The notes below the pieces were generated by a model. That model searched no databases, was not told where the DNA came from, and saw nothing but the letters and a program-made list of their open reading frames with translations. This document shows, piece by piece, positions 26,940 to 47,627 of a stretch of DNA of 64,000 nucleotides. Each line of letters begins with the position of its first letter. Position 1 is the stretch's first letter. The stretch lies in the IMG/VR virus record IMGVR_UViG_3300049215_000771, positions 186,001-250,000 of that record; one strand, 5' to 3'. A program made the position numbers and the translations under genes.

Positions 26940-27573
26940 CGATATGGAGGAGTGGGTTGAGCGAATTGAACATAAGCGCCATTATCGGACGTTGAGAAAT
27001 GCGCAACAAAAAGCCGAGAGGCTGCCCCAACGGGTGTCGCCCAATCACCCGTTAGCTGCAAACCTCTCGGCGTGCTTGAATGATACTACGATTTACCGAG
27101 GTTGTAAAGCACACGACCAGGAAATCTGAAAGAAATCCTGGTCGTGGCCGTGCGTCGAGAACCCATCCCGGTCCCCGATCCCTCCAGCCTATCCCACCAC
27201 CTGCCCCCTGTCCAGCAAAATCATCAACAATTTGACACTGTGCGTTTGTGCAGTATCAAAAATGAGGCGTCAGGTACAAAGGTTTGAAGTGGTGGTTTTA
27301 GAGATTTGTACCCTCCGGTCATTTTCTGCGCACGGATGTACACCAGGTTATTTGGGATAATGCCAGGGGGAGATTGAGGGGTGTTGCGCCGGGCTGGGGT
27401 TGGCTGGCAAAGGCTGTTTTTAGCATTTGTACAGTATTGTTTTAGGCATTTGTACCGTAGGGGTTGGCTGCGCCGGGCGTGGCTGGGGTGGGGTTGCGCC
27501 GAATTGCGTTGGGAGATTCCGAACCTTACGAGTTTGGGGCGGTCTTCCTGGCAACCCATAGGGAGGAATTTCG

Positions 27574-28665
27574 ATGTCGGTTCAACATTTCAAGGTGTTC
27601 TTCGGGCCGGACGATCCGTGGGGAGCGGTAGCGCCCACGGCGGACGAGCGCCGGGAGTTGGTGGAGAGTGGGTTTGCCGGTTTCATCGGCAACGAGCGGG
27701 CGATCAAGAAGCTGAAGGCGTCGGCGTTCGATGCCCTGGGCAAGCCCGACCATCTTTGCCGTGACCTGGCGTTCAGCATTTTCGGCCCGGCGTCGAGTGG
27801 CAAGACGACGCTGGCCCGGCTGTACGCCAAAACCGTCGATCTGCCCTTCGTGGAGGTTTCCCCGAAGGCGGTGAAGACGATGGACGACCTGTTCCGGGAG
27901 ATCGACCGGGTGTTGACGGTCGAGGGCGTGCCGGTGGTGGAAGTGGTCCGGCGCAACTACCATGTTCTGCCGCCCTGTGTGATCTTCATTGACGAGGTTC
28001 ACGCACTGGCGAAGGCAGTCGAGCAGGGCTTGCTGAAGGCGACGGAGTACAACGACGCCACGCTGGTCACGGAGTCCGGCAAAACGATCAACTGCCACAA
28101 TGTTTGCTGGATCATTGCCACGACGGACGAGGGGCGGCTGTTCGACGCATTCCGCACCCGGTTTTCGCCGGTCAACCTTCGCTATCTGAGCAAGGCGGAC
28201 ATTGCCAAGATCGTTCGCCTGGCTCACCCGGACTTCGACGAGGCGACGGCGGCGCTGGTTGCTCACTACAACAGCCGCATTCCCCGCAAGGCGTTGGAGT
28301 TCGCCCGTTACATGAAGTTGGTTCGGCAGATGGGCGCTGACCGCACCTGGGCGGACGTGGCGCAGGAAGTTGCCACGGATGAAGGGATCGACCAGTACGG
28401 CATGAGCGAGGTTCACCTTCGCATTCTGAAGGCGCTGGGCCAGGGTCCGGTGGCGGCAAACCGGATCGTGAATGTCGCAGGAGCGAAGAAGGAGGAAGTC
28501 GAGCGGTTCATCATGCCGTGGTTGCTGACGGTCACGGAAGACACGCCGGCGCTGGTCACGGTGACGAGCAGGGGATACACCATCACCGAGGCGGGCCTGG
28601 CCGAGTTGGACAAGCGAGGGATCGCCCATCGAGGGACGTTCGCCACGCCGAACTATCGCCCGTAG
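27574..28665 (+). CDS. ruvB: RuvB-like AAA+ branch-migration ATPase
   Basis: FIG.E; Walker A GPASSGKTT; Walker B FIDEVH; ATT.....DAFRTRF; C-terminal winged helix G.D..G......L....GP......RG..T. Confidence 0.8.
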   Translation: MSVQHFKVFFGPDDPWGAVAPTADERRELVESGFAGFIGNERAIKKLKASAFDALGKPDHLCRDLAFSIFGPASSGKTTLARLYAKTVDLPFVEVSPKAVKTMDDLFREIDRVLTVEGVPVVEVVRRNYHVLPPCVIFIDEVHALAKAVEQGLLKATEYNDATLVTESGKTINCHNVCWIIATTDEGRLFDAFRTRFSPVNLRYLSKADIAKIVRLAHPDFDEATAALVAHYNSRIPRKALEFARYMKLVRQMGADRTWADVAQEVATDEGIDQYGMSEVHLRILKALGQGPVAANRIVNVAGAKKEEVERFIMPWLLTVTEDTPALVTVTSRGYTITEAGLAELDKRGIAHRGTFATPNYRP

Positions 28666-28776
28666 TTCGGCGGCTGGCCGGGGGCTGCCCACTCCTGGCC
28701 TGGGCGCAATAGCCTACTGGTACAAACCTTCAAGTTGATGTTTTAGAGATTTGTACCCTACGGGCTGGAGGGAAGC

Positions 28777-28932
28777 ATGAAATACATCGTGTGGGTACGG
28801 GAGAAGGGGCGTTGGGAGCCGAACGGCGACGGGCCTTTGACGCAGAAGCAGGCCGAGCGGATTGCCAAGGAAATCCGTCAGGAGTGCAACGTGCCGACGA
28901 AGGTGTTGCCGGTGGGACAAGAACCGAAATAG
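28777..28932 (+). CDS. small hypothetical protein
   Basis: GGAGG SD after motif A. Confidence 0.6.
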   Translation: MKYIVWVREKGRWEPNGDGPLTQKQAERIAKEIRQECNVPTKVLPVGQEPK

Positions 28933-28940
28933 GAGGGGAT

Positions 28941-29141
28941 ATGGACCCTGTTGCTTGCATCGAGGAAGCCGAGGCGCAGATCGAATCCAACAACCCGGAC
29001 GATGCTGCCTGGGCGCTTCAGGACTATCGGGAGTGGCGGCGCAAGGGTGGATTCACCGACGCCGGCCTGGACGAGCGTGCCCGGATTGTCAACAAGGAAA
29101 TCAAGCAGACCGGGCATCCTGGGGTGAACCTGGGATTTTGA
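28941..29141 (+). CDS. small hypothetical protein
   Basis: AGGAGG SD. Confidence 0.65.
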   Translation: MDPVACIEEAEAQIESNNPDDAAWALQDYREWRRKGGFTDAGLDERARIVNKEIKQTGHPGVNLGF

Positions 29142-29197
29142 TGAAAGTTTCCGAACCTTGCTGGCCCGGCAAGGTCTTCCATGCGGGAGGGGACGAC

Positions 29198-29332
29198 ATG
29201 AAGAAAACGAATCGTGTGCGTAAACATCGTAGGGACAAGAACAACGGCAAGAACGGTTGGGTGGGTGGAAATCCCCGCTACGACCGTCGCAAGGCGACCG
29301 AGGGAAAGAATCGGTCGATGGGCCGCAATTAG
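29198..29332 (+). CDS. small basic protein
   Basis: after motif B. Confidence 0.55.
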   Translation: MKKTNRVRKHRRDKNNGKNGWVGGNPRYDRRKATEGKNRSMGRN

Positions 29333-29344
29333 GGAGGGGCTGCA

Positions 29345-29590
29345 ATGCCTGTTTCGTTGAATCGTGTTCTGACCGTGGCGAAGGGCAACGGGGGCTTCCT
29401 GGACCGCCTGGGCATTGAGACGATTGCCAGGGAGGACCGGCTTCGCCTGTTGCTGGTTCGGTGTGGCAATGGTCGTTTCCTGGCCCCGGCGCAGGACGTG
29501 AACCATTTCATCGCCATCATCGAGCGAGACAACCAGGACTACATTCGGGACGTGTCGCTGCCGACTTCCGACCCGATCTGGAAAACCTGA
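29345..29590 (+). CDS. hypothetical protein
   Basis: GGAGG SD; stop abuts motif B. Confidence 0.65.
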   Translation: MPVSLNRVLTVAKGNGGFLDRLGIETIAREDRLRLLLVRCGNGRFLAPAQDVNHFIAIIERDNQDYIRDVSLPTSDPIWKT

Positions 29591-29657
29591 AAGTTTCCGA
29601 ACCTTGCTGGCCCGGCAAGGTCTTCCATGCGAGTCGAGACAACCTGGATAGGGAGAA

Positions 29658-30179
29658 ATGAACATGGTCACTTTCAGCAAGGGCGACAACATCATCGACA
29701 GCCGGGACGTGATTTCCCGCATCGAGGAGTTGGAGTCCGAGCGTGAAGCCTTGTCCGATGCCGTGGACAGCGCTCGTGAGGCGTTGGAGGAACACCAAAG
29801 CAACGAGCCGGACGAGGACGCCGACGAAGAAGTACACGAAGCGTACCAGGAGAAGCTGTCGGAGTTGAAGGAAGCGCTGGTCGAGGCGGCTTCCGACCTG
29901 GACGATTGGGACGAGGACGACGACCAGGGCGGCGAGTTGAAGGAGCTTCGGGCCTTCAGCGAGGAGGGCGAGAGCGCCACGTCGGACTGGCCGCACGGCG
30001 CAATGTGCATCCTGGAAAGCTACTTCGAGGACTACTGCCAGGAGTTGCTGGCCGACATCGGCGACTTGCCGAAGGACTTGCCGCATTACATCGTGATCGA
30101 CTGGACGGCCACGGCGAAGAACCTGGAGGCCGACTATTCGAGCATCACCTGGGGCGGCGAGACGTATCTGGTCCGCTGA
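29658..30179 (+). CDS. acidic ArdA-like antirestriction (DNA mimic) protein
   Basis: very acidic; C-terminus FEDY..ELL.D.G.LP..L..YI.ID....A..L..DY resembles ArdA. Confidence 0.6.
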   Translation: MNMVTFSKGDNIIDSRDVISRIEELESEREALSDAVDSAREALEEHQSNEPDEDADEEVHEAYQEKLSELKEALVEAASDLDDWDEDDDQGGELKELRAFSEEGESATSDWPHGAMCILESYFEDYCQELLADIGDLPKDLPHYIVIDWTATAKNLEADYSSITWGGETYLVR

Positions 30180-30252
30180 TCCCGAACCTTAGACCATTCG
30201 CCCCGGTCTAAGGTATGCGTCGAGTATCCATTACCCTGGTAGGGAGAGAGTC

Positions 30253-30429
30253 ATGCAAGCAACGGTCGAGGGCAACGAGTTGGTGGTTCGCATTCCGCTT
30301 CAGAAGCCGGCTCCGAGTTCGACGGGCCGCACCCTGATCGTGGCGAACAGTGGCGGGCCGAAGGCGACCGAGGCCGAGGTCAACGGCAAGAAGATCACGG
30401 TCAACCTGAGCGCCTGGATCAAGCCCTAA
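30253..30429 (+). CDS. small beta-rich hypothetical protein
   Basis: GGGAG SD; followed by terminator. Confidence 0.65.
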   Translation: MQATVEGNELVVRIPLQKPAPSSTGRTLIVANSGGPKATEAEVNGKKITVNLSAWIKP

Positions 30430-30555
30430 CGTGTGGGCAACCGGCCTGGGGGATGCAGCCGCCCCCAGGCCGTTTCTTTGCGATAGGGAGCAGGTACAAA
30501 CCTTCAAGTTGTAGCTTTATAGGTTTGTACCCTACCGGCCAGGAGGTAACGGACC

Positions 30556-30714
30556 ATGAAAACTGTCACGATGCCGAAGAAGCCGGACATGACGATTCGC
30601 CTGGAGCCGATCAAGATGCGGCTTCCCTTCGTGGGTCGGGGGCGCAAGACCCGGCACGAGCCTCGCAGGAGTCGGCGGGGCGACAAGCAACGGATGGCGA
30701 AGGAAAGTTTCTGA
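30556..30714 (+). CDS. small basic protein
   Basis: AGGAGG SD after motif A; stop abuts motif B. Confidence 0.6.
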   Translation: MKTVTMPKKPDMTIRLEPIKMRLPFVGRGRKTRHEPRRSRRGDKQRMAKESF

Positions 30715-30789
30715 AAAGTTTCCGAACCTTGCTGGCCCGGCGAGGTCTTCCATGCGAGAGACGAGACAACCCCCAACGGGAGATATGGA

Positions 30790-32400
30790 ATGGCTGCTTT
30801 CCTGAAGATTCAGAATCCTGGCGTTGCTGATCCCCTGGCCTTCACCCTCCTGGGTGCTTCCACGAGCCGGTCCAGCGACAACAGCGCCACCATCGGCAAG
30901 TTCGGGTCGGGCAACAAGCACGGTGTCGCCGTGTGTCTCCGTGAGGAGTTGCCGCCCGTTGTGTTCGCCGGCACGCTCCGCATGACGTTCGGCACGACCG
31001 ACGTGAAGATGGACGCCGGCACGCACAGCAAGACGTTCGCTCGTGTGCAGGTGAAGTACGGCGGCAAGGACAAGGCCGGCGTCAACCGTTCGTCCACGGA
31101 AGACCTGGGCTATGTCCTGGAGTACGGGGCTTCCGACTGGCTGGGCATCGACCTGGCGCTTCGGGAGTTCGTGTCCAACGCCATCGACCGGGCGATTGTG
31201 GAAGGCGAGATCGCTTTCATCGCCAAGTTCGCTTTCGAGTACAACGAGCGCAACCCCGGCTTCCACGCCCTCCTGGACCAGAAGGACGCCGAGGCGGTTT
31301 CCATCTGCCACAAGGCGCTGGAAACCTACCGGCTGACGGCGCAGGACTTCAAGAACGTCCGGGTCGAGGTCGTGGAGGAGAACCAGGTCCGGGCGAAGGA
31401 CGGCTACACCACGGTTTTCGTGCCGCTGAATGCCGACGTTCTGGCGTTCTACCAGTCGCTTGGCAAGTGGTTCCTGCACTTCTCGGAGCCGGAACTGCTG
31501 AACAAGACGATTCTGCCGAAGAAGAATCGCAACCTGGGCAACCGGGTCGCAGCGGTGATCTACCGTCGTGGTGTTCGTGTTCGGGAGTTCGAGAGCAGCG
31601 ACGTTCCTTCGCTGTTCGATTACAACCTGCCGAACATCGAACTGGATGAGGCACGCAAGGCCGACGACTGGCGGATTCGGACGGCGGCGGGCAAGGCCGT
31701 CCGTGATGCCGACCAGGACACGCTTCGGGTGCTGTTCCAGTCGTTCCGCAGCAGCCAGCGCTATTGGGAACACGACTTCGACACCTACGGCCTGGAAGTG
31801 TCGTCGTGGGAGACGGACAAGCCGGAAGCGGCTGCCGCCCGTCAGACCAACTGGCAGAAGGCGTTCGAGCAGGTTTTCGACGCCAACGCTGTGATCGCCA
31901 CGGCGACGGGCGGCGAGTTTGCCGAGCGGAAGGGTTACAACGTCATCACGGCCCCGGAGCCGTTCGTCAAGGCGGCTGGCAAGCATGGCGTTCGCACCCC
32001 GGAGAAGGTGTTGACGCAGGACGACCGGGAAGGGCGAGAGATCATCGACGCCACGCCGGACGCTCTTGCCGCCCTGGACTTCGTGTGGGACGTGGTTCAG
32101 CGCTCTGGCATGACCAACGGCAAGGAGCGCCCGGCCTGCAAGGTGTTCCGCAAGATCATGTCGGGAGGGTCGCAGACGTTGGGGTTCTACCGTGACGCCA
32201 CGGTGTACATCAACGAGGACATCGCCGGCTATGGTTCGCTGACGGGCGGCTGGCAGGTGTTGACGCAGCAGCTTCTCGTGACGGCGCTGGAGGAAGTGGC
32301 CCATCACGTTACGGGGGCGACCGACAACAGCCGGGACTTCCAGGACTACGTTCTGAACCTGGCGATCAAGCTGGCGAAGGTCCAGGCCGGCTTGATCTGA
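30790..32400 (+). CDS. GHKL-type ATPase with permuted motif order and degenerate zincin-like tail
   Basis: LLGAS...IGKFGSG.K precedes DW...LREFVSNAID; C-terminal EEVAHH. Confidence 0.7.
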   Translation: MAAFLKIQNPGVADPLAFTLLGASTSRSSDNSATIGKFGSGNKHGVAVCLREELPPVVFAGTLRMTFGTTDVKMDAGTHSKTFARVQVKYGGKDKAGVNRSSTEDLGYVLEYGASDWLGIDLALREFVSNAIDRAIVEGEIAFIAKFAFEYNERNPGFHALLDQKDAEAVSICHKALETYRLTAQDFKNVRVEVVEENQVRAKDGYTTVFVPLNADVLAFYQSLGKWFLHFSEPELLNKTILPKKNRNLGNRVAAVIYRRGVRVREFESSDVPSLFDYNLPNIELDEARKADDWRIRTAAGKAVRDADQDTLRVLFQSFRSSQRYWEHDFDTYGLEVSSWETDKPEAAAARQTNWQKAFEQVFDANAVIATATGGEFAERKGYNVITAPEPFVKAAGKHGVRTPEKVLTQDDREGREIIDATPDALAALDFVWDVVQRSGMTNGKERPACKVFRKIMSGGSQTLGFYRDATVYINEDIAGYGSLTGGWQVLTQQLLVTALEEVAHHVTGATDNSRDFQDYVLNLAIKLAKVQAGLI

Positions 32401-32529
32401 TCTTTCTCCCTGGGTTGGCCCGGTGGGGGAGCAATCCCCTGCCGGGCTTTTTTGTCAGCACAGGCCAGGTACAATCCTACAAGTGGATGTTTTAGAGATT
32501 TGTACCCTACCAGTCGGGAGGAAAAAACC

Positions 32530-32622
32530 ATGATTGCAGTCAAGTTGTTCATTGGGTTCTACGGCATGGCCATCGTGTCGGCCATCATCGCCTGGTTGAC
32601 CAATGGTGAACGAAAACAGTAA
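32530..32622 (+). CDS. small membrane peptide (30 aa)
   Basis: GGAGG SD, single TM, between motif A and motif B. Confidence 0.55.
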   Translation: MIAVKLFIGFYGMAIVSAIIAWLTNGERKQ

Positions 32623-32824
32623 AAGTTTCCGAACCTTGCTGGCCCGGCGAGGTCTTCTATGCGAAGGACACAACGCCGAACGAAAAGGGGGTTAGATGCA
32701 GCTTCTCACTTGTTTAGCTGAGGCTTGTAAGGAACCATGAGCCTCGAACAAGGTTCCCCCTACGCCGCCTGCGACGGCGTAGGATTGGCCTGCGATTTCA
32801 ACAACCCATACGGAGGAAAGTTTC

Positions 32825-33379
32825 ATGGTGATGCACGGTTCCGATCACGCCCTTCGCAGTCAGTTCAAGGTGGGCGACAAGGTTTATTTCGGTCGCAAAC
32901 GGGGCGAGAAAACGCTCGGCGAGATCGTCCGCTTCGGCCCGAAGAACGCCAAGGTCAAGCAGTTGGAGGATCGGGGTTCGATTCGGGATTATCCCATCGG
33001 CACGACCTGGACGGTCCCGCTCAAGCTGCTGACGCTGGCCACGGTGCAGTTTCCCGCCGACAAGCTGCCCAGCAGCGCTCCGCCCCCGCCCGTGAAGCGG
33101 GAGCCGTTGAAGTACAACCCGTTCGCCGGCATCGACAACCTGCTCCTGGAAGCCCTGGCGTCGGCCTACAGCGGCCTCAGCCCGGAGAACCTGACCTGTG
33201 ACGGCGAGGCCAGCGCCGCCCATGTCCAGGCCACCCGGACGCACCTGAATCGTGTCATTCGTGGCTGCAAGCTGGCCCTGAACCGTGATGATCTCGACGA
33301 AGGCGAGGTCTTCACCTGGCTGATGACCAAGCGGGACTATGAGCGCCAGCGGGCCGAGCGAAAATCGGCCACGGCCTAA
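32825..33379 (+). CDS. hypothetical protein (SH3/KOW-like N-terminus)
   Basis: FKVGDKV.F..G......K..KV. Confidence 0.65.
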   Translation: MVMHGSDHALRSQFKVGDKVYFGRKRGEKTLGEIVRFGPKNAKVKQLEDRGSIRDYPIGTTWTVPLKLLTLATVQFPADKLPSSAPPPPVKREPLKYNPFAGIDNLLLEALASAYSGLSPENLTCDGEASAAHVQATRTHLNRVIRGCKLALNRDDLDEGEVFTWLMTKRDYERQRAERKSATA

Positions 33380-33448
33380 GAAATTTCCGAACCTCCGCTC
33401 GCCCCGGAGGTCTTCCTTGCGGGCAACGACAACCATAGGGAGAAGGAC

Positions 33449-33895
33449 ATGAAGCATATCGACGACCTGATGAAGTCGCAACAGGGCGAGCGCAACCCAG
33501 GGCAGCACATCGGCAAGTTCCTGTTGGAACATTCCAACTCGCCGGAATACCTGGTGAGCCAACTGTCGGCCTACCTGGAAGCGGCCCAGGCCGACCTGGA
33601 AGCCGAGCGAGCGATGTTTCGGCGTCTCACGAAGCGGCCCGACCCGCCGAAGCCCACCAAGTTCGCCGTCGTGCAGGTGAAGGGCGGGGCGTCCAACGCC
33701 CTGGGGACGAGCGGGCCGGTCCAGGTCTGCCAGTACAAGCAGGACGCACAAGACCTGGCGGTGAAGATCGCCCTTGAGGGGTTGACCGAGCCTGGTGATC
33801 CGGGCGAGGCCGAGGTTCGCAAGGAAATCTTGGAAACGGGAGGCTACATCGACAACAGCGGCGAGTGGGCCGTGTGCATCGAGAGCATCGAGTAA
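33449..33895 (+). CDS. hypothetical protein
   Basis: after motif B. Confidence 0.7.
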   Translation: MKHIDDLMKSQQGERNPGQHIGKFLLEHSNSPEYLVSQLSAYLEAAQADLEAERAMFRRLTKRPDPPKPTKFAVVQVKGGASNALGTSGPVQVCQYKQDAQDLAVKIALEGLTEPGDPGEAEVRKEILETGGYIDNSGEWAVCIESIE

Positions 33896-40041: not shown

Positions 40042-40045
40042 ACGA

Positions 40046-40613: not shown

Positions 40614-40844
40614 ATGAAACAAATGGACCATGCGGCTTATCAACGCAAGTGCCGTGGTCTGCCAGAAGCGTCCCTTCGCTACATCTTGAAGGATGCGAAG
40701 GAAGCTATCGACGCCCAACCGTTCGGCGAGAACGCTGGTTACTACGCCGATGAAATCCACTACGCTGCAATGGAGTTGCGACGGCGAGGCCAGGAGGCCA
40801 GCGACCTTCCCCCACTTGTGAAGGACATAGGGATCAAATCATGA
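40614..40844 (+). CDS. conserved phage hypothetical protein
   Basis: L.YI..DA.EA ... G.Y.DE.HY...EL.RR. Confidence 0.7.
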   Translation: MKQMDHAAYQRKCRGLPEASLRYILKDAKEAIDAQPFGENAGYYADEIHYAAMELRRRGQEASDLPPLVKDIGIKS

Positions 40845-41344
40845 ACGTGGAACTTGTGAAGCGTCTGTTCGCCCACTTCGCCCCCGCCCCCGAAGTCAAG
40901 ATCGACAAGTACAGCGAGGATGGCTGTTGCCCTGCCATCATCATCGGCCCCTTCACCATCAGTCAGTCGCTTACCGTCGTCAAGGGGCTGAAGGGCGACC
41001 ACGAGGTTCCCAACTACAGCCTGGACGTTCACGTTGGCGACGGCGACATTATCGACCTGGCGACTGCCACGAACTTCGCCGACGTGGTTGTGGCTGCCGT
41101 CGAGAACTACGCCGGCTGGCTGGCACGGGCTGAACTGGACCGCATCGCTGACGACGCCTATGCCGCTGACCTGGAGAGCGAGCGTCTGGCCTTGCAAGCC
41201 GCCTTCAACGAGGGGCTGGAATACTACAGGACGACTGCCCCCGGCGAGCGTAGCAAGGACGCCAACCCCTACCCCCACGGCATCGAGCATTACTACAAGT
41301 GGGCGTCCGGCTACAGCCAGGGCGAGGCGGAAGCGGTGTTTTGA
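40841..41344 (+). CDS. hypothetical protein
   Basis: ATGA overlap. Confidence 0.7.
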   Translation: MNVELVKRLFAHFAPAPEVKIDKYSEDGCCPAIIIGPFTISQSLTVVKGLKGDHEVPNYSLDVHVGDGDIIDLATATNFADVVVAAVENYAGWLARAELDRIADDAYAADLESERLALQAAFNEGLEYYRTTAPGERSKDANPYPHGIEHYYKWASGYSQGEAEAVF

Positions 41345-41460
41345 CCTTTGTACCCTGTCGGTTGTCGAGGCCGGGCCGGACGAAAAAAGTTTCCGAACCT
41401 TCAACGTCCGGCCCGGTCTTCCTGGTGGGCAACGAACTCTTCAACGAAAGGCAGGTTGCG

Positions 41461-42117
41461 ATGAACACTTTCCGAGCCGGCAGCGACCAGTCCCAGCGTT
41501 TCATCAACGAGGGGCGGCGTCGTGAGAAGCAGATTGCGGACGCCTTGAAGAAACAGCACGGCCTGAACCTGGTCGAGCCGACTGACGCCGAAGACCGTTA
41601 CCAGAAGATCGACCGCTGGCTGGTCGAGGGCGACAAGCGGACGGCGGTTCAGATCAAGTACAGGGAGAGCGGCGACGACTTGCTGGTGGAAGTGTTCGAC
41701 CGTTGGCACGGTTGGGACCATCCCCGCAACAAAACGGGCCGGGACGTGGTTGGCGATAGCAAGCTGTACGCTGTGCTTCGCCTGGACCGGGAAACCGTCG
41801 TTCTCACCAGCGCCGCCATCCTCAAGGGGATTGTGCAGGAGATGGTGACGGCAGCGCAGGCGACGGGCTGGACCGTGGACCGTGGCACGCACAGCAAAGT
41901 CCTCCGCTACTTCAAGGCGGGTGGGTGCTGTGAGTTGAAGGTCCAGTCCGACCCCAACGACGGCAGGCCGAAGATGGTTGCATACATCCCGGCCAACGTC
42001 CTGATCTTCGAGCAGCAGGCCGAGGTCTACAAGGTCCGCCTGCCTGCCGACTGGTCAGGAGAGGGCAAGAAGAAGGAACGGCCACGCCGCACCGACCTTC
42101 GGGGCGGCACGAACTAG
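41461..42117 (+). CDS. PD-(D/E)XK nuclease-like protein
   Basis: G..RE ... D....ID ... VQIKYR. Confidence 0.6.
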   Translation: MNTFRAGSDQSQRFINEGRRREKQIADALKKQHGLNLVEPTDAEDRYQKIDRWLVEGDKRTAVQIKYRESGDDLLVEVFDRWHGWDHPRNKTGRDVVGDSKLYAVLRLDRETVVLTSAAILKGIVQEMVTAAQATGWTVDRGTHSKVLRYFKAGGCCELKVQSDPNDGRPKMVAYIPANVLIFEQQAEVYKVRLPADWSGEGKKKERPRRTDLRGGTN

Positions 42118-42239
42118 GCTAGTAGCAGGGACAACCAGGAGCAGCGACGGCTGACTCCTGGCCCCTGCGAACGCTGCGTTAGACCATTGTACCCTAGTTC
42201 GATGTGAGCTATATCTTCAACCTGGATATGGAGAAAGTC

Positions 42240-42887
42240 ATGGGTCGCAAACTGGTGGTGCGAATCGAACACGATTCCGACGTTGAAGTGCCGGACAGCG
42301 GGTATGACGGCTGGAAGCTGGTGTCCTTCGGACGCCGGCACAGCAACTACGAAGACCCCGACAACTACATCAAGGGCGTGAACGAGTTCCGGGAAATCAC
42401 CCCGGCCAACATCGGCCTTCGCCGCAAGCTGAACGTCGGCCTGGCCTTCTGGCTGTCCTACTACGAACACAGCCTTGGTTGCTGGTCCCTCAAGGGCGAA
42501 GGTCCGCAATGCCAGTGGGACACGGCGCAACTGGCCGGCATCCTGCTGTGGACCGGCAAGCCCGGCGACATTGGAGCGAAGACCCTGGAGGATCGGGCGA
42601 AAGATGCTCGCTGCTTCCTGGAGAGCTACAACGATTGGGCTAACGGCAACTGCTACTGGTACAGCGTCGAGAAAACGGACGGCACGGACGTTGAGAGCGT
42701 CGGCGGGTTCATCGGCGAAGAAGCTGTGAACGAGGCGCTGGCCGAAGTCCTTGAGGCCGGCGACGTTGTGACCGTCGAAGGTGACGCCGCCTGGACCTTC
42801 GACGCACCGGAAGGCGTCGAAGTGGTGGACGAACACGAGGAGGACGAGGAGGAGGAAGCGACGGTCAGCGACGGTGCAGGCATCTGA
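42240..42887 (+). CDS. acidic hypothetical protein
   Basis: GGAG SD; acidic tail. Confidence 0.7.
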   Translation: MGRKLVVRIEHDSDVEVPDSGYDGWKLVSFGRRHSNYEDPDNYIKGVNEFREITPANIGLRRKLNVGLAFWLSYYEHSLGCWSLKGEGPQCQWDTAQLAGILLWTGKPGDIGAKTLEDRAKDARCFLESYNDWANGNCYWYSVEKTDGTDVESVGGFIGEEAVNEALAEVLEAGDVVTVEGDAAWTFDAPEGVEVVDEHEEDEEEEATVSDGAGI

Positions 42888-43209
42888 CACGACAAGCCCC
42901 AGGCTGGCCCGGCCTGGGGCATTTTGGGAAATCCCCATCAGGTACAAACTTTCAAGTTGATGTTTTAGGCCATTGTACCCTAGCGGTTGGCCCGATGGCT
43001 GCCGGTGGCACGGTGGCATCGGACAACCTTCTGACGGCTCTAGGGGTAAGGGGCCGTATGGGGTTGCTGTGCTTGTGCGTTCGTCGCCACAACGACGCAT
43101 CGGCCTGCAATCTTTGCAACCATCCGTCAGAATTCTTGAAAGTTTCCGAACCTTGTTGGTTCGGCGCAGTCTTCCTTGCGGGTAGGACAGTCATACGGAG
43201 AATCGAGTC

Positions 43210-43575
43210 ATGTTGAAGCATCGTGTTGCGGTTATCATCCCCTCCACCGTCAAGGGCAACGAGCCGGCTCCTGCCGACCTGGTTGCCAAGTGGGTCAAGG
43301 CGGCGAAGATCAAGCTGGGAACCCTGTTCGGTGGCTTCACTGCCACGAAGGGCGAAGGCGGCTGGGTTTCCCCCGTCCACGGCTTGATTGAAGAGCCGGT
43401 CACTGTTGTCGCCGCCCACTGTGACGAAGAGGCTTTCAACCGTCACGCCCAGGACGTTCGTGAATTCGCCTTGACCGTCGCCGTGGCGCTGGAGCAGGAA
43501 GCCGTTTCCGTCCAGTTCGACAACACGCTGGAATTCGTCAGCGTGCCGCCCGCCGTCGCCGTCAACGTGGTCTGA
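43210..43575 (+). CDS. DUF3574/SAM-lyase-like protein
   Basis: FGG.T...G.GGW ... IEE...V ... EQEAV. Confidence 0.5.
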   Translation: MLKHRVAVIIPSTVKGNEPAPADLVAKWVKAAKIKLGTLFGGFTATKGEGGWVSPVHGLIEEPVTVVAAHCDEEAFNRHAQDVREFALTVAVALEQEAVSVQFDNTLEFVSVPPAVAVNVV

Positions 43576-43788
43576 TCGGAAGGCCAGGGTCGCCCACCCT
43601 GGCCTTTGTTGGTAATACCCTACAGGTACAAAGGCTGAAGCGTTGCTTTAGAGGTTTGTACCCTAGTGGTCGGGTGAAAACCCTCGCAACAACAATCCTG
43701 GGCGGCGAGCGCCGGCCCTTGTAAGTTTCCGAACCTTGTGGTCTTGTGAAGCGTCTTCCCTGCGAAGCATACGGAAAGGACAATAACC

Positions 43789-44532
43789 ATGCTGACCTAC
43801 ACGCAAGCCGTCGCCAAGCTGGGCAATCGGGAGCGTAAGAAGCTCGCCAGCAACACCTACCTGGAGCGCAACGGCGAGCATACCATCAACGTCGTGCTGC
43901 ACCGCACCGCCATCGTCCAGATTCACGACAACGGCACTTACACGCTCAACAGCGGGGGCTGGCGCACCGTCACGACGAAAGCCCGCATCAACGACTATAG
44001 CCCCGCCAGGCTACACCAGAGCAACAACATCTGGTATGTCGGCAATGCCATTTTCCATGATGGCATCGTCGTGGACGGCAACGGCACGCCGACTGTCGAA
44101 ACGGCCAACGTCGCCGAGACTGTGAAGGCCAAGCGAGCGCTGGATCGCAAGGTCAACGCCTACATCAAGGCTTTCGCTGCCGATGCCGTGGCGAATGGGG
44201 GCTTGACCGCTCCCAGCAATGGCGACTGCTGGGGCTGCCTGTTCAAGCGGGACAGCGCCAATGGCGAGCAGGGCCGGCTGTTCAGCAAGGGCGTGGACGT
44301 TCACGCCGACAACCCGATGGGATTCGACCATTTGCTACAGCACATGGAGGAGAATTACTTCGTGCCGTCCTTGCTCCACAAGGCGATTGTGGCGCACGGC
44401 TACGTCAACCCTGGCATCATCTGGGCGCATATCGACAGCGACATCAAGGCGGGTCGCACCGATAGCCTGATCCGAGAACTACGCTTCTACTTCACCCGCC
44501 TGAAGCCCGAACTGCTGAAGCTGGCTGCCTGA
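43789..44532 (+). CDS. conserved phage hypothetical protein
   Basis: LH.TAIV ... LNSGGW.T.TTK.RIN. Confidence 0.7.
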   Translation: MLTYTQAVAKLGNRERKKLASNTYLERNGEHTINVVLHRTAIVQIHDNGTYTLNSGGWRTVTTKARINDYSPARLHQSNNIWYVGNAIFHDGIVVDGNGTPTVETANVAETVKAKRALDRKVNAYIKAFAADAVANGGLTAPSNGDCWGCLFKRDSANGEQGRLFSKGVDVHADNPMGFDHLLQHMEENYFVPSLLHKAIVAHGYVNPGIIWAHIDSDIKAGRTDSLIRELRFYFTRLKPELLKLAA

Positions 44533-44601
44533 AATTTGTGAAGGGCGATCTTTAGGGCTTTGTACCCTAGAGGTCGCCCTACTTTCACCAACGAGGTCAA
44601 C

Positions 44602-44922
44602 ATGACGAATCAAGAAGTCCTGGAACTGGCAACCTTGCGTCAACGTGGTCAAGCCGACAGCGATGAAGTGGGCGTTGACATTCGCACGCATCATCCGACG
44701 CTAGGGCATCAGGGCGGGTATCTGACCGTCGATGAAGCCGGCGAGAGTGTCAGCTTCCACTATGACGATCTATGGTTCACTGGCACGGGTTGGGAGTCGG
44801 AAGATAATCTCGGCCTCTACAACGAAGACGGCGACCGCAATGAAGATGCCGAAGTGCCCGAAGTGAGCGCAGCCGAATTCTCCGCTTGGTTCACGGGCGC
44901 TGACTGGAAGCTGCTCAACTAG
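44602..44922 (+). CDS. acidic hypothetical protein
   Basis: GAGG SD after motif A half. Confidence 0.65.
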   Translation: MTNQEVLELATLRQRGQADSDEVGVDIRTHHPTLGHQGGYLTVDEAGESVSFHYDDLWFTGTGWESEDNLGLYNEDGDRNEDAEVPEVSAAEFSAWFTGADWKLLN

Positions 44923-45015
44923 CTGGACAGGCCAGGGCTGACCCGCCCTGGCCCTTGTTGGCGGACAGCACCAGGTACAAACTTTCAAGTTGTAGCTTTA
45001 GACCATTGTACCTTA

Positions 45016-45315
45016 GTGGTCGTCCGACAAACAACTCCCCCTGACGGGGGAAACGCCGAGAGTCAAGAGGGAGGGATCGAAAGTGCCCCCGCAAGGGGCC
45101 GACCCGGAATAAGCGTTGCGGAGTAACCGGATGCAGTCTGCCTGGTCCTAACGGATAATGAGTAGCTACCCCAGGCCAACGCAGTCTCGACGCAAGCGAC
45201 GAAGAAGGGCAATCCTGAAGCCTTGAACGGGCGACTAAGCCGAAAGGCAGTCAGTCACCGGCTTACAACACGGTGCGACGAAGGGAGCAGGCAGGCCGCT
45301 GCTCCCTTCGTTCTT
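45016..45315 (+). ncRNA. candidate ~300-nt structured ncRNA
   Basis: between two motif A copies, no ORF, several GNRA hairpins, terminal 13-bp hairpin. Confidence 0.6.
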
Positions 45316-45409
45316 CAACCCAAGGTCCGGTACAATCCTTCAAGTTGATGATTTAAGCCTTTGTACCCTAACGGCTGTCGCCCGACACCTTCACTCAGGA
45401 GCCTTGACC

Positions 45410-45736
45410 ATGCGTTGCGAAGACTTCCCCTGCTGCGGCCACGAACCCGGTTGCTGCCCGAACTTCGACGAGGCGGGCCGGCAGACCGACATGGTTTGCA
45501 CCTGTGGCGCTCGCCTCCCCATCACGTCTCGCTACTCCATCTGTGAGGCGTGCCTCCGGGCCGGCGACGAGGACTTCGACGAGCCGCCCTTCGACGACGA
45601 GGACTTCGACGACGAGCCGGACCCGTTCCACGGCGACGACGCCGCAGCGGACGCCGATGCCCTGGCCTCCGCTGGCTGGGGCACGGATGAGGACTACGGC
45701 GGATACGAGGACTTCGGCGACTATTGGGGCGATTGA
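45410..45736 (+). CDS. Cys-rich/acidic small protein
   Basis: RCEDFPCCG..CC; DADALASAGWGTDEDYG. Confidence 0.7.
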   Translation: MRCEDFPCCGHEPGCCPNFDEAGRQTDMVCTCGARLPITSRYSICEACLRAGDEDFDEPPFDDEDFDDEPDPFHGDDAAADADALASAGWGTDEDYGGYEDFGDYWGD

Positions 45737-45871
45737 TCGCCTGGCCAGGGCAGCCCAGCCCTGGCCTTTTTTGTTCGGTATAGGCCAGGTACAAACCTTC
45801 AAGTTGATGATTTAAGCCTTTGTACCCTAGTGGGCGGAAGGTCCGAATCTCTCAACCCTGCGAGGTGCGCT

Positions 45872-46660
45872 ATGCAGTTCACGAACTCCCGTACCGGCGA
45901 AGTCATCAACACCAACCTGGACCGTGCGGGCATCCTGGCCGCTTTCGGCGAAGTCGCTCAGGCCGATAGCTGGTTGTGGTATTGGCTGGTCAAGACCATC
46001 AACGATGCGGCCAGCGCCGCCGGCAACAAGGACATGATCGCTTTCCTGGCCGATTCCTTCGTGTTCGCCGTGGGCATGGGCTTGAAAGCCCCCATGATTC
46101 GCCTGGGCTTCCAGGAGCGCCGCTACAAGATTTACCTCTCCCGTCGTGGTACACTGTGCTTCAAGTCGGGCGCTGTCCGGCCTGGCACGTCCGATCCCAT
46201 CGGCGATGAGGAATACGTCGGCTGCCTGTATCAAGGGCGCTTCCTGCCCAACAAGGAGCGCCGCCCGCTGGCCGTGGAAAACGAATTCTTCGCTCGCCTG
46301 AGCGCCGACCCGGTTGGCTTCATGGCCGCTTGCTCGAAAGACATGAATCGCTGTTGCTACTGCAACCTCCCCCTGGAGGATGAGCGTAGCAAGGAAGTCG
46401 GCTACGGCAAGATTTGTGCAGAGCGCTGGGGCTTGCCCTGGGGCAAGGGCAGCGGCTCTCACGTCGTCAGCTTCGCCCAGCTTTGGGAACGGGCTGGCAC
46501 GACGGAAGCCCGCAACATCAGGGGCTTGTGCCAGGCCATTCGCCAGCAACCCCGCCAGGAAGAACTCTGGCTTATCCTGGGCGATGCCCTGGAGGAAGCG
46601 GGCTGGACCGGCAAGAAGCCGCAAGCCCCGCAGGGCAGCGTAGTCGTGCCCGCCCTGTAA
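45872..46660 (+). CDS. DUF6011-like zinc-binding protein with C-terminal TIGR02996-like domain
   Basis: CCYC..PL.D.RS...GYG.ICA..WGLPWG; L..AIR..P..E..WL.L.D.LEE.G. Confidence 0.65.
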   Translation: MQFTNSRTGEVINTNLDRAGILAAFGEVAQADSWLWYWLVKTINDAASAAGNKDMIAFLADSFVFAVGMGLKAPMIRLGFQERRYKIYLSRRGTLCFKSGAVRPGTSDPIGDEEYVGCLYQGRFLPNKERRPLAVENEFFARLSADPVGFMAACSKDMNRCCYCNLPLEDERSKEVGYGKICAERWGLPWGKGSGSHVVSFAQLWERAGTTEARNIRGLCQAIRQQPRQEELWLILGDALEEAGWTGKKPQAPQGSVVVPAL

Positions 46661-46771
46661 CGCTGAAGGGGGCTGACTTCATGTCAGCCCCCTTTTCTTC
46701 AACCTGTTGCTTTAGGCATTTGTACCTTAGTGGTTGTCGCCCGACACACTCAACACTGCGAGGTCAGAATC

Positions 46772-47164
46772 ATGGGCATCCGTCTCTACCCGAACACGAA
46801 GAACGTCGCCTCCCTGGAAACCATCTGCGGCGTGCCCGCTGGCACGGCTGCCCGCCTGGAGGCCGTGGAAGCCCGCCACGCCGAAGAGTTGAAGCCGCTG
46901 GCCGGCAAAGCCCCCTGGGAGCGCCAGGACGTTGAATATCGCCAGTGGTGCGAAATCAACGATGATGCGGCGCTGGGCGATTACCACGCCTTCCTGTTGT
47001 ACGGTTGGGGCAAATTCAACGACCCGCACGGCGTTACGGTGCGGGACGGCGAGCGCACCTGTTCGGGAAGCGTCAGCGATCCCGTCAAGGTCGTGCTGCT
47101 GTTGCGACCGAACGGGCTGGACGAAACGCACCTGGCCCTGATGGAAGGGGTTCACTGGTGCTGA
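46772..47164 (+). CDS. hypothetical protein
   Basis: GAGG SD after motif A half. Confidence 0.7.
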   Translation: MGIRLYPNTKNVASLETICGVPAGTAARLEAVEARHAEELKPLAGKAPWERQDVEYRQWCEINDDAALGDYHAFLLYGWGKFNDPHGVTVRDGERTCSGSVSDPVKVVLLLRPNGLDETHLALMEGVHWC

Positions 47165-47273
47165 GTCACCAGGCCGCAGGGGGCTTCAACCCCCTGCGGC
47201 TTTTTTAGTCCGACTTCTTTAGACCATTGTACCCTAGTGGTTGTCGCCCGACACCTTCAACCCGGAGAGTTCG

Positions 47274-47618: not shown

Positions 47619-47627
47619 TGCAATGAT

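What the first reader, a model, noticed from the sequence alone, without database searches (positions are those of the whole stretch)
27273..47233. Motif A: 39-bp palindromic element GGTACAAA-N23-TTTGTACC with a promoter-like right half
About 13 full copies keep the arm spacing at 22-24 bp, and the 40204 copy is palindromic over 14 bp per arm. About 9 more sites retain only TTAG..(T/A)TTGTACCCT. The TACCCT keeps the three key -10 bases (T, A, T), and the tRNA-like RNA starts 7-8 nt after it. The right half is therefore probably a promoter and the full palindrome an operator or recombination site for a dimeric protein. Full copies usually follow a terminator, marking transcription-unit boundaries.
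Basis: partly seen in the sequence, partly recalled or inferred. Interest (0 to 1): 0.7.

Follow-up and report, generated by a model that had tools for sequence, protein, structure and literature searches.

The report
Phage promoter with inverted upstream copy
A 20-kb block of small genes in an uncultivated phage of about half a megabase carries 21 same-strand copies of a promoter-like motif (TTGTACCCTA) shared by the phage's relatives. At twelve operon starts an inverted copy of the motif sits upstream and makes the 39-bp palindrome: a familiar kind of phage signal with an unusual symmetric addition.

Summary
The window holds 12 full palindromes and 9 right-half-only sites, all on the + strand between 27273 and 47233. 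Chance expects none. In the whole 532-kb phage record, 21 of the 22 strong matches lie in this one GC-rich block.

The right half behaves as a promoter. It precedes genes and non-coding RNAs and often follows intrinsic terminators. Its core, TGTACCCTA, is conserved in the same gene block of many related huge phages with block GC of 43-61%. One relative has 39 of 39 copies in a single 26-kb block. No phage RNA polymerase was found, but two sigma-like genes were. I therefore favour host core polymerase directed by a phage sigma. No start site was mapped.

The left arm is an inverted copy of the promoter core. It is optional across the clade, from 0 of about 40 sites to 8 of 13. It occurs almost only behind an upstream hairpin. 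Its spacing falls into two classes about one helical turn apart, and its inner bases do not covary. This favours protein binding on DNA over an RNA hairpin.

No tyrosine or serine recombinase was found. The closest analogue is the T4-type PeSL terminator-promoter cassette. I rate it a new variant of a known kind, of moderate interest.

The parts
27232..47700 (+). The block that holds every copy. It has about 37 small + strand genes and several non-coding stretches. GC is 60% against about 52% in the flanks. A sigma70-like TTGACA-N16-TATCAA sits at its start (27232-27259).
27273..27312 (+). Full palindrome 1 (N24) with promoter core. It is the first copy, in the 420-nt non-coding lead-in to the AAA+ ATPase gene.
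27440..27467 (+). Half site (core TTGTACCGTA), 124 nt before the AAA+ gene. A partial direct repeat of the core precedes it.
28719..28757 (+). Full palindrome 2. The start codon follows 26 nt after the core.
30493..30531 (+). Full palindrome 3. It lies behind the hairpin 30443-30471 plus T-rich tail and starts the operon with the 536-aa gene.
32468..32506 (+). Full palindrome 4 (left arm GGTACAAT), 20 nt behind the strong terminator 32417-32448.
34016..34054 (+). Full palindrome 5, behind the hairpin 33972-33994.
37700..37727 (+). Half site (core TTGTACCTG) overlapping the end of the upstream ORF.
37831..37869 (+). Full palindrome 6 (arms TGTACAAA / ATTGTACC), behind the hairpin 37791-37809. 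It precedes the tRNA-like non-coding RNA.
38795..38822 (+). Half site directly abutting the upstream stop codon, 44 nt before the next start.
39715..39742 (+). Half site (TTAAGCCTTTGTACCCTC).
40204..40242 (+). Full palindrome 7 with 14-bp arms, behind the terminator 40155-40181 plus T6.
41338..41365 (+). Half site at a gene junction. One RNA read spans it (41254-41404).
42177..42204 (+). Half site, 53 nt before the next start.
42941..42979 (+). Full palindrome 8, behind the hairpin 42897-42919. A 237-nt non-coding leader follows. A strain-variant junction lies at 42965.
43625..43662 (+). Full palindrome 9 (N22), behind the hairpin 43582-43604.
44550..44577 (+). Half site overlapping the end of the upstream ORF, 36 nt before the next start.
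44974..45012 (+). Full palindrome 10, behind the hairpin 44930-44953. It drives a non-coding RNA of about 260-300 nt seen in metatranscriptomes (45030-45276) that stops at the hairpin 45283-45306. A strain-variant junction lies at 44972.
45329..45367 (+). Full palindrome 11, behind the hairpin 45283-45306.
45788..45826 (+). Full palindrome 12, 22 nt behind the terminator 45743-45766.
46710..46737 (+). Half site about 27 nt behind the terminator 46668-46692. It has no left arm.
47217..47244 (+). Half site about 25 nt behind the terminator 47171-47202. It is the last copy. An RNA contig covers 47256-47483.

Best explanation
**Right half.** The block TTTAGnnnTTTGTACCCTA followed by GnGGTyG is the promoter of a dedicated transcription class. 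That class serves one contiguous block of about 20 kb of small, mostly unknown genes and a few small RNAs in a huge phage. The invariant core TGTACCCTA is most likely read as a -10-like element (TACCCT = TAnnnT, with upstream TTG/TTTAG contacts and no -35 element). Transcription would start in the conserved G-rich stretch 1-8 nt after CCCTA.

**Left arm.** The arm GGTACAAA is an inverted copy of that same core. It is added only at operon-start copies that sit about 20 nt behind a terminator hairpin. Together they form a composite boundary cassette: terminator, inverted core, spacer, promoter.

**How the arm works (inferred).** I infer that the arm is a second, non-initiating binding site on the same face of the DNA for the protein that recognises the promoter core. 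It would either help load polymerase where no read-through arrives, or act head-on as a roadblock that backs up termination.

**Side effect.** Because the cassettes are repeated, they also serve as homology patches at which gene cassettes are exchanged between strains.

**Status.** The motif, its distribution, conservation, terminator association and spacing classes are shown. Promoter activity, the sigma assignment, the start site and the role of the arm are inferred.
For: **Enrichment and strandedness**
- 7 exact palindromes against 0 expected.
- 21 of 22 weight-matrix hits in 532 kb lie in the block, all on the + strand.

**Placement**
- Where a gene follows directly, the core lies 25-53 nt before an SD-preceded start codon; the other copies have longer leaders or non-coding RNA.
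- Many copies come right after a GC hairpin with a T-run, where transcription must restart.
- Sigma70-type promoters occur only at chance level in the block (3 against 3.4 expected).

**Conservation of the core in the homologous block of relatives (block GC 43-61%)**
- L029, L030, L032, L038 (36 copies), L039 (42 copies), L041, L051, L131, L155, L162 and L163 all carry it.
- In a 340-kb relative, 39 of 39 copies are on one strand within one 26-kb block.
- A deeper branch has switched to AATTGTATTTTT..., as expected if promoter and factor co-evolve.

**Polymerase**
- No T7-like polymerase was found by PF00940 or a motif-B scan, and no multisubunit polymerase by PF00623, PF00562 or a DFDGD scan.
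- There are two sigma-like genes. One is 322 aa with regions 2 and 4, with homologues in two relatives. The other is 179 aa with region 2 only and resembles the T4 gp55 late sigma.

**RNA**
- Three independent metatranscriptomes have a contig starting at 45030, 45035 or 45054 and ending at 45273-45276.
- That span runs from just after the core at 45006 to the hairpin at 45283. None of these contigs crosses the palindrome.

**Left arm**
- In relatives it reads (TA)GGGTACAAAT, the full inverted core. In L051 the element is perfectly symmetric.
- 28 of 31 arm-bearing copies have a stable upstream hairpin, against 24 of 72 arm-less copies (Fisher 7e-8).
- The spacing from GTACAA to TGTACC is 25-27 nt in 24 copies and 16-18 nt in 10, about one helical turn apart.
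- The inner arm bases show no copy-specific complementarity (own 3.17 against cross 3.35).

**Exchange**
- DNA contigs from the source metagenome join 37825-37854 to 42965 and 30461-30490 to 44972. A second strain has different cassettes between the same elements.
Against: - No transcription start site was mapped. The RNA evidence is a handful of low-depth assembled contigs without strand information.
- One RNA read spans the half site at 41348, and one spans the terminator plus palindrome at 45361. These may be read-through or DNA carry-over.
- No factor has been tied to the motif.
  - The 179-aa sigma looks like a late-gene sigma, and this block does not look late.
  - The 322-aa sigma has a region 4 but the motif has no -35 element.
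- CCC inside a -10 element is unusual.
- The IMG/VR record may be incomplete. The identical 536-aa protein is also on record from a 673-kb contig, so a polymerase gene could lie outside the 532 kb.
- The PF00940 search had no positive control.
- The hairpin association is not corrected for shared ancestry or GC content. Two arm-less copies (46720, 47227) also follow terminators.
- The helical-phasing argument rests on 34 copies from about 10 genomes.
- The role of the left arm is untested, and in this window the arm has lost the CTA part of the core.
Confidence: 0.55

Rival explanations
1. The motif is a promoter, but for an unrecognised phage-encoded, possibly virion-delivered, RNA polymerase. 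It would resemble T7, N4 or crAss-type systems rather than host polymerase with a phage sigma. Initiation would be at the G immediately after CCCTA.
For: - The motif is a contiguous, asymmetric block of about 20-25 bp that abuts a conserved G-rich initially transcribed sequence, with no -35 element.
- It switches as a whole in a deeper branch, as single-subunit polymerase promoters do.
- It serves a compact block of small genes typical of early regions.
- The record may lack about 140 kb of the genome.
- Giant ORFs of 4553 and 2048 aa have no known function.
Against: - PF00940, PF00623 and PF00562 give no hit.
- There is no Rx3Kx6-7YG motif outside a PolA-type DNA polymerase, and no DFDGD or DxDGD motif in any long frame.
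- The 4553-aa ORF has no DxDxD. The 2048-aa ORF has a single N-terminal DxDxD and is a low-complexity Ile/Pro/Thr repeat protein.
- Two sigma genes are present.
Confidence: 0.15
2. The full palindrome is an operator for a separate dimeric or tetrameric phage regulator. The regulator would switch operon-start promoters on or off during infection. The overlap with the promoter core would be how it occludes or recruits polymerase.
For: - The arms are exact 8-10 bp inverted repeats at fixed spacing.
- The two spacing classes lie one helical turn apart, and there is no covariation.
- Only a subset of promoters carries the arm, which would allow differential control.
- The block encodes many small proteins of unknown function.
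Against: - The half site equals the invariant promoter core in every lineage, and the arm follows each lineage's own core variant. A separate protein with the same specificity is therefore an extra assumption.
- Relatives with about 40 promoters have no arm at all.
- Half sites 22 or 31 bp apart centre to centre are far apart for a simple dimer.
- No DNA-binding candidate was identified.
Confidence: 0.15
3. The elements are mainly recombination substrates. The repeated promoter cassettes, with the inverted core acting as a terminal inverted repeat of each gene cassette, would exist because they mobilise ORFan cassettes, as PeSLs do or as integron attC sites do. Any effect of the arm on transcription would be incidental.
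For: - Strain-variant contigs have junctions inside the elements.
- The block is a mosaic of conserved backbone genes and lineage-specific ORFans.
- Read as a cassette, promoter core, gene, hairpin and inverted core form a unit bounded by inverted repeats.
- PeSLs are documented to work this way (PMC2839356, PMC4122927).
Against: - No tyrosine or serine recombinase is in the record, with positive controls ringing.
- Relatives keep dense arrays of the right half with no arm.
- The constant, helically phased spacing and the strict link to terminators are not needed for homologous exchange.
- The junction evidence comes from assembled metagenome contigs and may reflect diverged strains rather than events at these sites.
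Confidence: 0.1
4. The palindrome acts as RNA or as extruded DNA. It would be a hairpin in read-through transcripts (a back-up terminator or processing site) or a cruciform promoter like the N4 virion-polymerase promoters.
For: - The arms could form an 8-14 bp stem.
- The element lies just downstream of terminators, where read-through RNA would contain it.
- The copy at 40204 has an extended 14-bp stem.
Against: - There is no compensatory variation in the inner arm positions.
- Loops of 14-24 nt are poor for hairpins or cruciforms.
- Spacing varies in steps of one helical turn, which a loop would not require.
- Most promoters in the clade work without the arm.
- N4 promoter hairpins have a 5-7 bp stem and a 3-nt loop (from memory), which is unlike this.
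Confidence: 0.05

Closest known systems
PeSL (promoter-early stem-loop) cassettes of T4-type phages (Arbiol et al. 2010, PMC2839356; Comeau et al. 2014, PMC4122927)
   Same: - Both are small repeated composite elements: a GC-rich stem-loop terminator directly followed by a promoter.
- Both are concentrated in a region rich in small ORFans.
- In both, the copies flank cassettes that differ between close strains, with junctions inside the elements.
   Different: - The PeSL promoter matches the host sigma70 consensus with an AT-rich upstream region. This promoter is unrelated to it and has no -35 element.
- PeSLs have no inverted copy of the promoter core.
- These phages are not shown to be T4-like.
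- Here all copies sit in one block rather than in several hyperplastic regions.
Phage-specific promoters read by phage sigma factors (T4 gp55 late promoter TATAAATA; SPO1 gp28 and gp33/34; phiEco32 gp36). Consensus sequences are from memory.
   Same: - There is a phage-wide, non-host consensus centred on a -10-like element with little or no -35 element.
- The phage encodes sigma-family proteins, including a gp55-like protein with region 2 only.
   Different: - The motif is much longer (about 19-25 bp conserved within a genome) and G+C-rich in the -10 element.
- It is confined to one block of small genes rather than spread over late genes.
- No sigma has been assigned to it.
T7, SP6 and T3-type single-subunit polymerase promoters
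   Same: It is a contiguous asymmetric block of about 20 bp running into a conserved G-rich start region. It is repeated before many genes on one strand and changes as a unit between lineages.
   Different: No T7-like polymerase gene is detectable. The sequence is unrelated. T7-type promoters have no inverted upstream copy.
Start-associated and extended start-associated sequences (SAS/ESAS) of Cluster K mycobacteriophages (from memory, not checked here)
   Same: These are repeated asymmetric motifs just upstream of many genes. A subset is preceded by imperfect inverted repeats with a variable spacer.
   Different: SAS overlaps the ribosome-binding site and is thought to act on translation. Here the motif lies 25-53 nt upstream of start codons where a gene follows directly, follows terminators, and also precedes non-coding RNAs.
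Integron attC sites
   Same: These are imperfect palindromes between promoter-proximal gene cassettes.
   Different: attC needs an integron integrase and a single common promoter. Here there is no tyrosine recombinase, and every cassette has its own promoter, which is itself one arm of the palindrome.

Membership tests
PeSL composite terminator-promoter cassettes (T4-type phages) | The promoter part matches the host sigma70 consensus (-35, -10, AT-rich upstream region) | tested here: not met
   The motif has no -35 element and no TATAAT. The sigma70-type scan of the block gives 3 sites against 3.4 expected.
PeSL composite terminator-promoter cassettes (T4-type phages) | A stable GC-rich stem-loop lies directly upstream of the promoter | tested here: met
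   11 of 12 full copies have a hairpin of -12 kcal/mol or stronger. Strong terminators lie at 32417-32448, 40155-40181, 45743-45766 and 47171-47202.
PeSL composite terminator-promoter cassettes (T4-type phages) | Enriched in ORFan-rich plastic regions, with copies mediating indels and replacements between close relatives | tested here: inconclusive
   The block is a mosaic of backbone genes and ORFans. Metagenome contigs carry junctions inside copies. These are assembled contigs, not demonstrated recombination events.
T7-like single-subunit RNA polymerase promoters | The genome encodes a T7-like RNA polymerase (Pfam RNA_pol PF00940; motifs A, B, C) | tested here: not met
   PF00940 gives no hit in this record or in 3 relatives, though the search had no positive control. 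The only Rx3Kx7YG motif belongs to a PolA-type DNA polymerase. The record may be incomplete.
T7-like single-subunit RNA polymerase promoters | A contiguous conserved block of about -17 to +6 with a fixed start base | tested here: inconclusive
   The block shape fits. The start base is not mapped.
Sigma70-family dependent promoter (-10 TAnnnT read by region 2) | A -10-like hexamer with T-12, A-11 and T-7, and a start 6-8 nt downstream | tested here: inconclusive
   TACCCT is invariant across the clade. The 5' acceptor strand of the tRNA-like RNA begins 7-8 nt after it. RNA contigs begin a little further downstream. No start site is mapped.
Sigma70-family dependent promoter (-10 TAnnnT read by region 2) | A cognate sigma factor is available and no phage polymerase is present | tested here: met
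   Two sigma-like genes are present. No multisubunit polymerase was found, with controls ringing. Which sigma reads the motif, if either, is unknown.
T4 gp55-type late promoters | A short -10-only element upstream of late (structural) genes throughout the genome | tested here: not met
   The motif is confined to one 20-kb block of small non-structural genes.
Integron attC or other site-specific recombination site | A cognate tyrosine or serine recombinase is encoded | tested here: not met
   PF00589 and PF00239 are absent from the 532-kb record, with controls ringing in 14 and 12 of 14 genomes.
Structured RNA or DNA hairpin element | Compensatory changes keep the arms paired | tested here: not met
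   The core arms are invariant and so uninformative. Inner positions pair no better with their own partner than with other copies (3.17 against 3.35). There is no Rfam match.

The most novel reading that the evidence does not exclude
The palindrome is a two-faced polymerase-binding boundary element. The inverted, non-initiating promoter core would hold a second molecule of the promoter-recognition factor, or a whole holoenzyme, on the same DNA face. This molecule would face the upstream operon head-on, so that protein-roadblock termination and re-initiation are coupled in one 39-bp module. In lineages such as L051 the hairpins lack U-tracts and the inverted core is complete. There the module may be a true bidirectional promoter whose antisense arm does the terminating.
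Probability: 0.2. Interest if true: 0.65.

Novelty: new variant of a known kind. Interest (0 to 1): 0.5.

Why it matters
**A usable handle on uncultivated phages.** Huge phages of 0.3-0.7 Mb are known almost only from metagenomes, and their gene-expression programmes are unknown. This motif is a sequence-level marker for one transcription class. It is recognisable from GC 43% to 61% and defines a discrete block of small genes and RNAs in each genome. Annotators can use it to delimit the block, to predict operon starts, and to find small RNAs that gene callers miss.

**A testable pairing.** The phages appear to lack their own polymerase but carry sigma genes. Matching motif to sigma can be tested in vitro without culturing the phage. 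The motif switch in a deeper branch offers a natural specificity-swap experiment.

**Two wider questions.**
- If the inverted core works as a phased second binding site, it would be an unusual way of coupling termination and re-initiation.
- The repeated cassettes extend PeSL-style modular shuffling beyond T4-type phages.

Tried and rejected
- **IMG/VR motif scan.** A scan for TTTAGNNNWTTGTACCCTA gave only single, chance-level hits. The window's own record is hidden from that scan.
- **Metagenome palindrome scan.** Only L051, L131, L155 and L056 proved to be relatives.
- **Megablast of the block against GenBank phages.** No match.
- **RNA families.** Rfam at gathering score found nothing in the window. 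With permissive E-values it found only a sub-threshold mascRNA-like hit and nothing for 42900-45450. The RNA at 45016-45330 folds no better than shuffles (z = -0.9), and so does 37873-38062 (z = 0.07).
- **Search for a phage polymerase.** PF00940, PF00623, PF00562 and my own motif scans were all negative. The 4553-aa and 2048-aa ORFs have no PHROG, Pfam or PDB identity.
- **The conserved 536-aa protein.** I suspected a transcription factor. Language-model and structure neighbours place it with GHKL-type ATPases instead.
- **Foreign insertion.** I considered that the GC-rich block was a foreign insertion or satellite. I rejected this because its genes are core genes of the clade and the same GC step occurs in six relatives.
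- **The left arm as a -35 element.** Its position fits only the short-spacing class, so I rejected this.
- **Literature.** Searches for the motif strings returned only unrelated papers.
- **Lost look-ups.** Three contig look-ups returned no DNA.
- **Not used.** No complex prediction or structure prediction was run.

Full report
**Where the window lies.** The window is bases 186001-250000 of a 532,729-bp IMG/VR virus record. It was assembled from moss metagenomes. The record carries 56 tRNA genes and has no integrase or resolvase. A protein identical to one encoded in the window is also on record from a 673-kb contig. It is therefore a huge, probably lytic, phage, and the 'provirus' label is doubtful.

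**The observation.**
- The exact pattern GGTACAAA-N(20-26)-TTTGTACC occurs 7 times, with none in 100 shuffles.
- Allowing one mismatch in an arm gives 12 full copies of 38-40 bp. Nine more sites have only the right half.
- All 21 sites are on the + strand between 27306 and 47233. The shared consensus is TTTAGnnnTTTGTACCCTA(G)nGGTyG.
- A weight matrix built from them finds 22 hits of at least 18 bits in the whole 532 kb. Of these, 21 are in this block and none is on the other strand.
- The block (about 27.2-47.7 kb) has 60% GC against about 52% around it. All its genes are on the + strand.

**Anatomy of the block.**
- Using GC3 and ribosome-binding sites I placed about 37 small genes.
- Where a gene follows directly, the core lies 25-53 nt upstream of an SD-preceded start codon. 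Otherwise it heads a non-coding stretch: after 37863, 42973 and 45006, and in the lead-in after 27306 and 27450.
- Full copies lie about 20 nt behind a GC-rich hairpin, usually with a T-rich tail. Strict terminators are at 32417-32448, 45743-45766 and 47171-47202. Others are at 30443-30471, 33972-33994, 40155-40181, 42897-42919, 43582-43604, 44930-44953 and 45283-45306.
- Arm-less copies mostly overlap or abut the end of the upstream ORF. Two of them (46720, 47227) sit closer behind a terminator.
- Full copies therefore mark operon starts, and half sites are mostly internal promoters.
- Sigma70-type promoters are no more frequent in the block than in shuffles.
- Genes without a copy in front of them are separated by a second repeated element, described under 'Other observations'.

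**Relatives.**
- The 536-aa protein of the block has more than 700 homologues at 50-79% identity, many on contigs of 120-670 kb. It is a core gene of a clade of huge phages.
- I fetched the neighbourhood from eleven relatives. All show the same layout: an AAA+ ATPase, the 530-aa gene, and dozens of small same-strand genes.
- Nearly all carry the core TGTACCCTA in the same orientation in their intergenic gaps. The upstream extension differs by lineage:
  - L029: TTTAGGCGTT
  - L032 and L163: TAGTGTCA(T/G)
  - L162: TAGGTCCAG
  - L131: ATAGCGnnAT
  - L038 and L039: (G/A)AGTAA
- Copy numbers reach 36 in L038 and 42 in L039, each in about 21 kb.
- These blocks span 43-61% GC.
- In the 340-kb record G001, all 39 copies of GTGTACCCTA are on one strand inside a single 26-kb block.
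- A deeper branch (54% protein identity; L164 and L170) has replaced the motif by AATTGTATTTTT followed by GAAACGGAACTTCC.
- In all six relatives tested the block is richer in GC than its flank. The GC step is thus a property of the block and not a sign of recent import.

**Why I read the right half as a promoter.**
- It is the only conserved element between a terminator and the next gene.
- It is strictly co-oriented with the genes.
- It also precedes non-coding RNAs.
- It is conserved across wide divergence while the coding content turns over.
- It switches as a unit in a distant branch.
- The RNA data are thin but point the same way:
  - Three independent metatranscriptomes (X5, X11, X13) each hold a contig starting at 45030, 45035 or 45054 and ending at 45273-45276.
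  - That span runs from just downstream of the core at 45006-45012 to the foot of the hairpin at 45283-45306. None of them crosses the palindrome.
  - Another run has a contig at 47256-47483, just after the copy at 47227.
  - Two single reads do cross copies (41254-41404 and 45248-45398). They may be read-through or DNA.

**Which polymerase.**
- I found no T7-like polymerase. PF00940 was negative here and in three relatives, though without a positive control. The only motif-B match belongs to a PolA-type DNA polymerase at genome position 513229-514572.
- I found no multisubunit polymerase. PF00623 and PF00562 were negative with all controls positive. There is no DFDGD motif.
- The 4553-aa and 2048-aa ORFs have no recognisable family. 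The first has no DxDxD. The second has a single N-terminal DxDxD and is a low-complexity repeat protein.
- The phage does encode a 322-aa sigma with regions 2 and 4, with homologues in G001 and G002.
- It also encodes a 179-aa protein with region 2 only. This protein matches the PHROG of late sigma factors and is very conserved, with more than 1200 homologues at 62-87% identity.
- The most economical model is host core polymerase with a phage sigma, reading TACCCT as TAnnnT with upstream contacts and no -35 element.
- I cannot say which sigma. An unrecognised phage polymerase, possibly encoded outside this record, remains a live alternative.

**The left arm.**
- In relatives the arm reads (TA)GGGTACAAAT, which is the complete core inverted.
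- In L051 eight elements are symmetric over at least 10 bp per arm, so the full core is present on both strands.
- In this window the arm is reduced to nGGTACAAA. The weight matrix does not score the reverse strand as a promoter.
- The arm is optional:

| Genome | Sites with arm |
|---|---|
| L038, L039 | 0 of about 80 |
| L032 | 1 of 23 |
| L131 | 1 of 22 |
| L155 | 1 of 8 |
| L162 | 2 of 25 |
| L029 | 5 of 8 |
| Window | 12 of 21 |
| L051 | 8 of 13 |

- Across the genomes that have the arm, 28 of 31 arm-bearing copies have a stable hairpin just upstream, against 24 of 72 arm-less copies (Fisher 7e-8). This is not corrected for relatedness.
- The distance from GTACAA to TGTACC is 25-27 nt in 24 copies and 16-18 nt in 10 copies. 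The two classes differ by about one helical turn, and L051 contains both.
- Inner arm bases pair with their own partner no better than with other copies' partners.
- These facts argue for a protein-bound DNA site on one face of the helix and against a hairpin.
- The arm has the same sequence as the promoter core in each lineage. The simplest candidate binder is therefore the promoter-recognition factor itself. What that achieves (recruitment, roadblock or antisense initiation) is inference.

**Recombination.**
- The source metagenome contains contigs whose loose ends place 37825-37854 next to 42965, and 30461-30490 next to 44972. Both junctions are inside copies.
- A second strain at about half the depth has different sequence between the same elements.
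- With no site-specific recombinase in the record, this fits homologous exchange between repeated cassettes, as shown for PeSLs in T4-type phages (PMC2839356, PMC4122927).
- I treat this as a likely consequence of the repeats rather than their purpose.

**Comparison and verdict.**
- The element works like a PeSL: a terminator plus a promoter, repeated in an ORFan-rich region. It fails the PeSL membership test on the promoter type.
- It looks like a T7-type promoter in shape, but the polymerase is missing.
- It fits a sigma-dependent -10-only promoter, but no sigma is assigned and it is not on late genes.
- The inverted core with phased spacing has no counterpart that I could find in the literature searches.
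- I class it as a new variant of a known kind, with moderate interest.

**Other observations.**
- A second intergenic repeat (AGTTTCCGAACCT, a hairpin, then GTCTTCCTTGCGAG) has about 18 copies. Three of its six predicted pairs show compensatory changes.
- A tRNA-like or tmRNA-like RNA lies after the copy at 37863, and a relative's block encodes SmpB.
- The genome carries suppressor-type tRNA genes.
- The 536-aa protein resembles GHKL-type ATPases.

I named no alternative genetic code and altered no sequence.

Noticed in passing
window 27514, 29146, 29592, 30177, 30717, 32624, 33382, 34381, 35260, 35585, 36362, 36650, 38067, 39093, 40560, 41388, 43141, 43724 (each about 45-70 nt, + strand); one more at 21837, outside the block: A second repeated intergenic element: AGTTTCCGAACCT, a variable hairpin, then GTCTTCC(T/A)TGCGAG. 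It usually runs into a conserved CCATAGGGAG ribosome-binding site. It fills the gaps between genes that have no Motif A copy. Three of the 6 predicted stem pairs show compensatory changes, so it is probably an RNA-level signal for processing, stability or translation.
   Followed up: partly
window 37879-38054 (+): A tRNA-like or miniature tmRNA-like RNA follows the copy at 37863. The 5' strand GCCUCCG pairs with CGGAGGC at 38044-38050, next to a GGUUCGAGUCC T-arm. The Rfam mascRNA model gives E=0.009, below its threshold, and ARAGORN calls nothing. L039, L162 and L163 have a similar T-arm just before a promoter copy, and one relative's block encodes SmpB.
   Followed up: partly
window 45016-45320 (+): A non-coding RNA of about 260-300 nt lies between the promoter copy at 45006 and the hairpin 45283-45306. 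It is the part of the block best represented in three independent metatranscriptomes, one of them a soil sample with a sequence variant. It has no Rfam family and no unusual fold energy.
   Followed up: partly
G000 genome: tRNA genes at 145-121540 and 472882-497080: The phage carries 56 tRNA genes. Three have anticodon CTA (which would read TAG) and one has TCA (which would read TGA). This hints at stop-codon suppression or recoding somewhere in the genome. ORFs in the block are open under the standard code. I did not test recoding.
   Followed up: no
window 27200-47700 and the homologous blocks in L029, L032, L038, L039, L040, L162: The promoter-bearing block is 2-11 GC points richer than its flank in the window and in six relatives. 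GC3 is about 0.8 here. Its genes may be tuned to the host tRNA pool, while the rest of the genome relies on the phage's own tRNAs.
   Followed up: partly
window 30790-32400 (+): The clade-wide 536-aa protein has no Pfam domain. Its neighbours by protein-language-model features and predicted structure are phage and bacterial 'ATP-binding proteins' with HATPase_c_3 / MPN635_N domains (GHKL-type ATPases).
   Followed up: partly
G000 genome 262499-276160 and 293649-299795 (+): Two giant ORFs have no family match. One is 4553 aa. The other is 2048 aa, made almost entirely of Ile/Pro/Thr-rich repeats, and its repeats account for the commonest 11-mers in the genome.
   Followed up: partly
L164 / L170 (IMG/VR records, 54% identity in the 536-aa protein): In this deeper branch the repeated upstream motif is AATTGTATTTTT followed by GAAACGGAACTTCC, in about 17 copies, instead of TGTACCCTA. 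This is a natural switch of promoter specificity that could be matched to changes in the sigma genes.
   Followed up: partly
L162, L163, L032 (promoter copies): There are two promoter sub-types within one genome. Copies behind terminators read ...TCTAT/GTAAT-TGTACC, and internal copies read ...TCCAG/GTCAG-TGTACC. This suggests that operon-start and internal promoters are tuned differently even where no left arm is present.
   Followed up: no
G000 genome 349292 (+): This is the only strong Motif A match outside the block (20.4 bits, TTTTAGACCTTTGTACCTGCC). I did not examine its context.
   Followed up: no
window 27232-27259 (+): A good sigma70-type promoter candidate (TTGACA, 16 nt, TATCAA) lies 14 nt upstream of the first palindrome, at the entry to the block. 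It could be a host-polymerase entry point. It may also be a chance match.
   Followed up: no
whole record G000: IMG/VR labels the record 'provirus'. It has no tyrosine or serine recombinase, and the identical 536-aa protein is on record from a 673-kb contig. The record may be a trimmed part of a larger lytic phage genome.
   Followed up: partly
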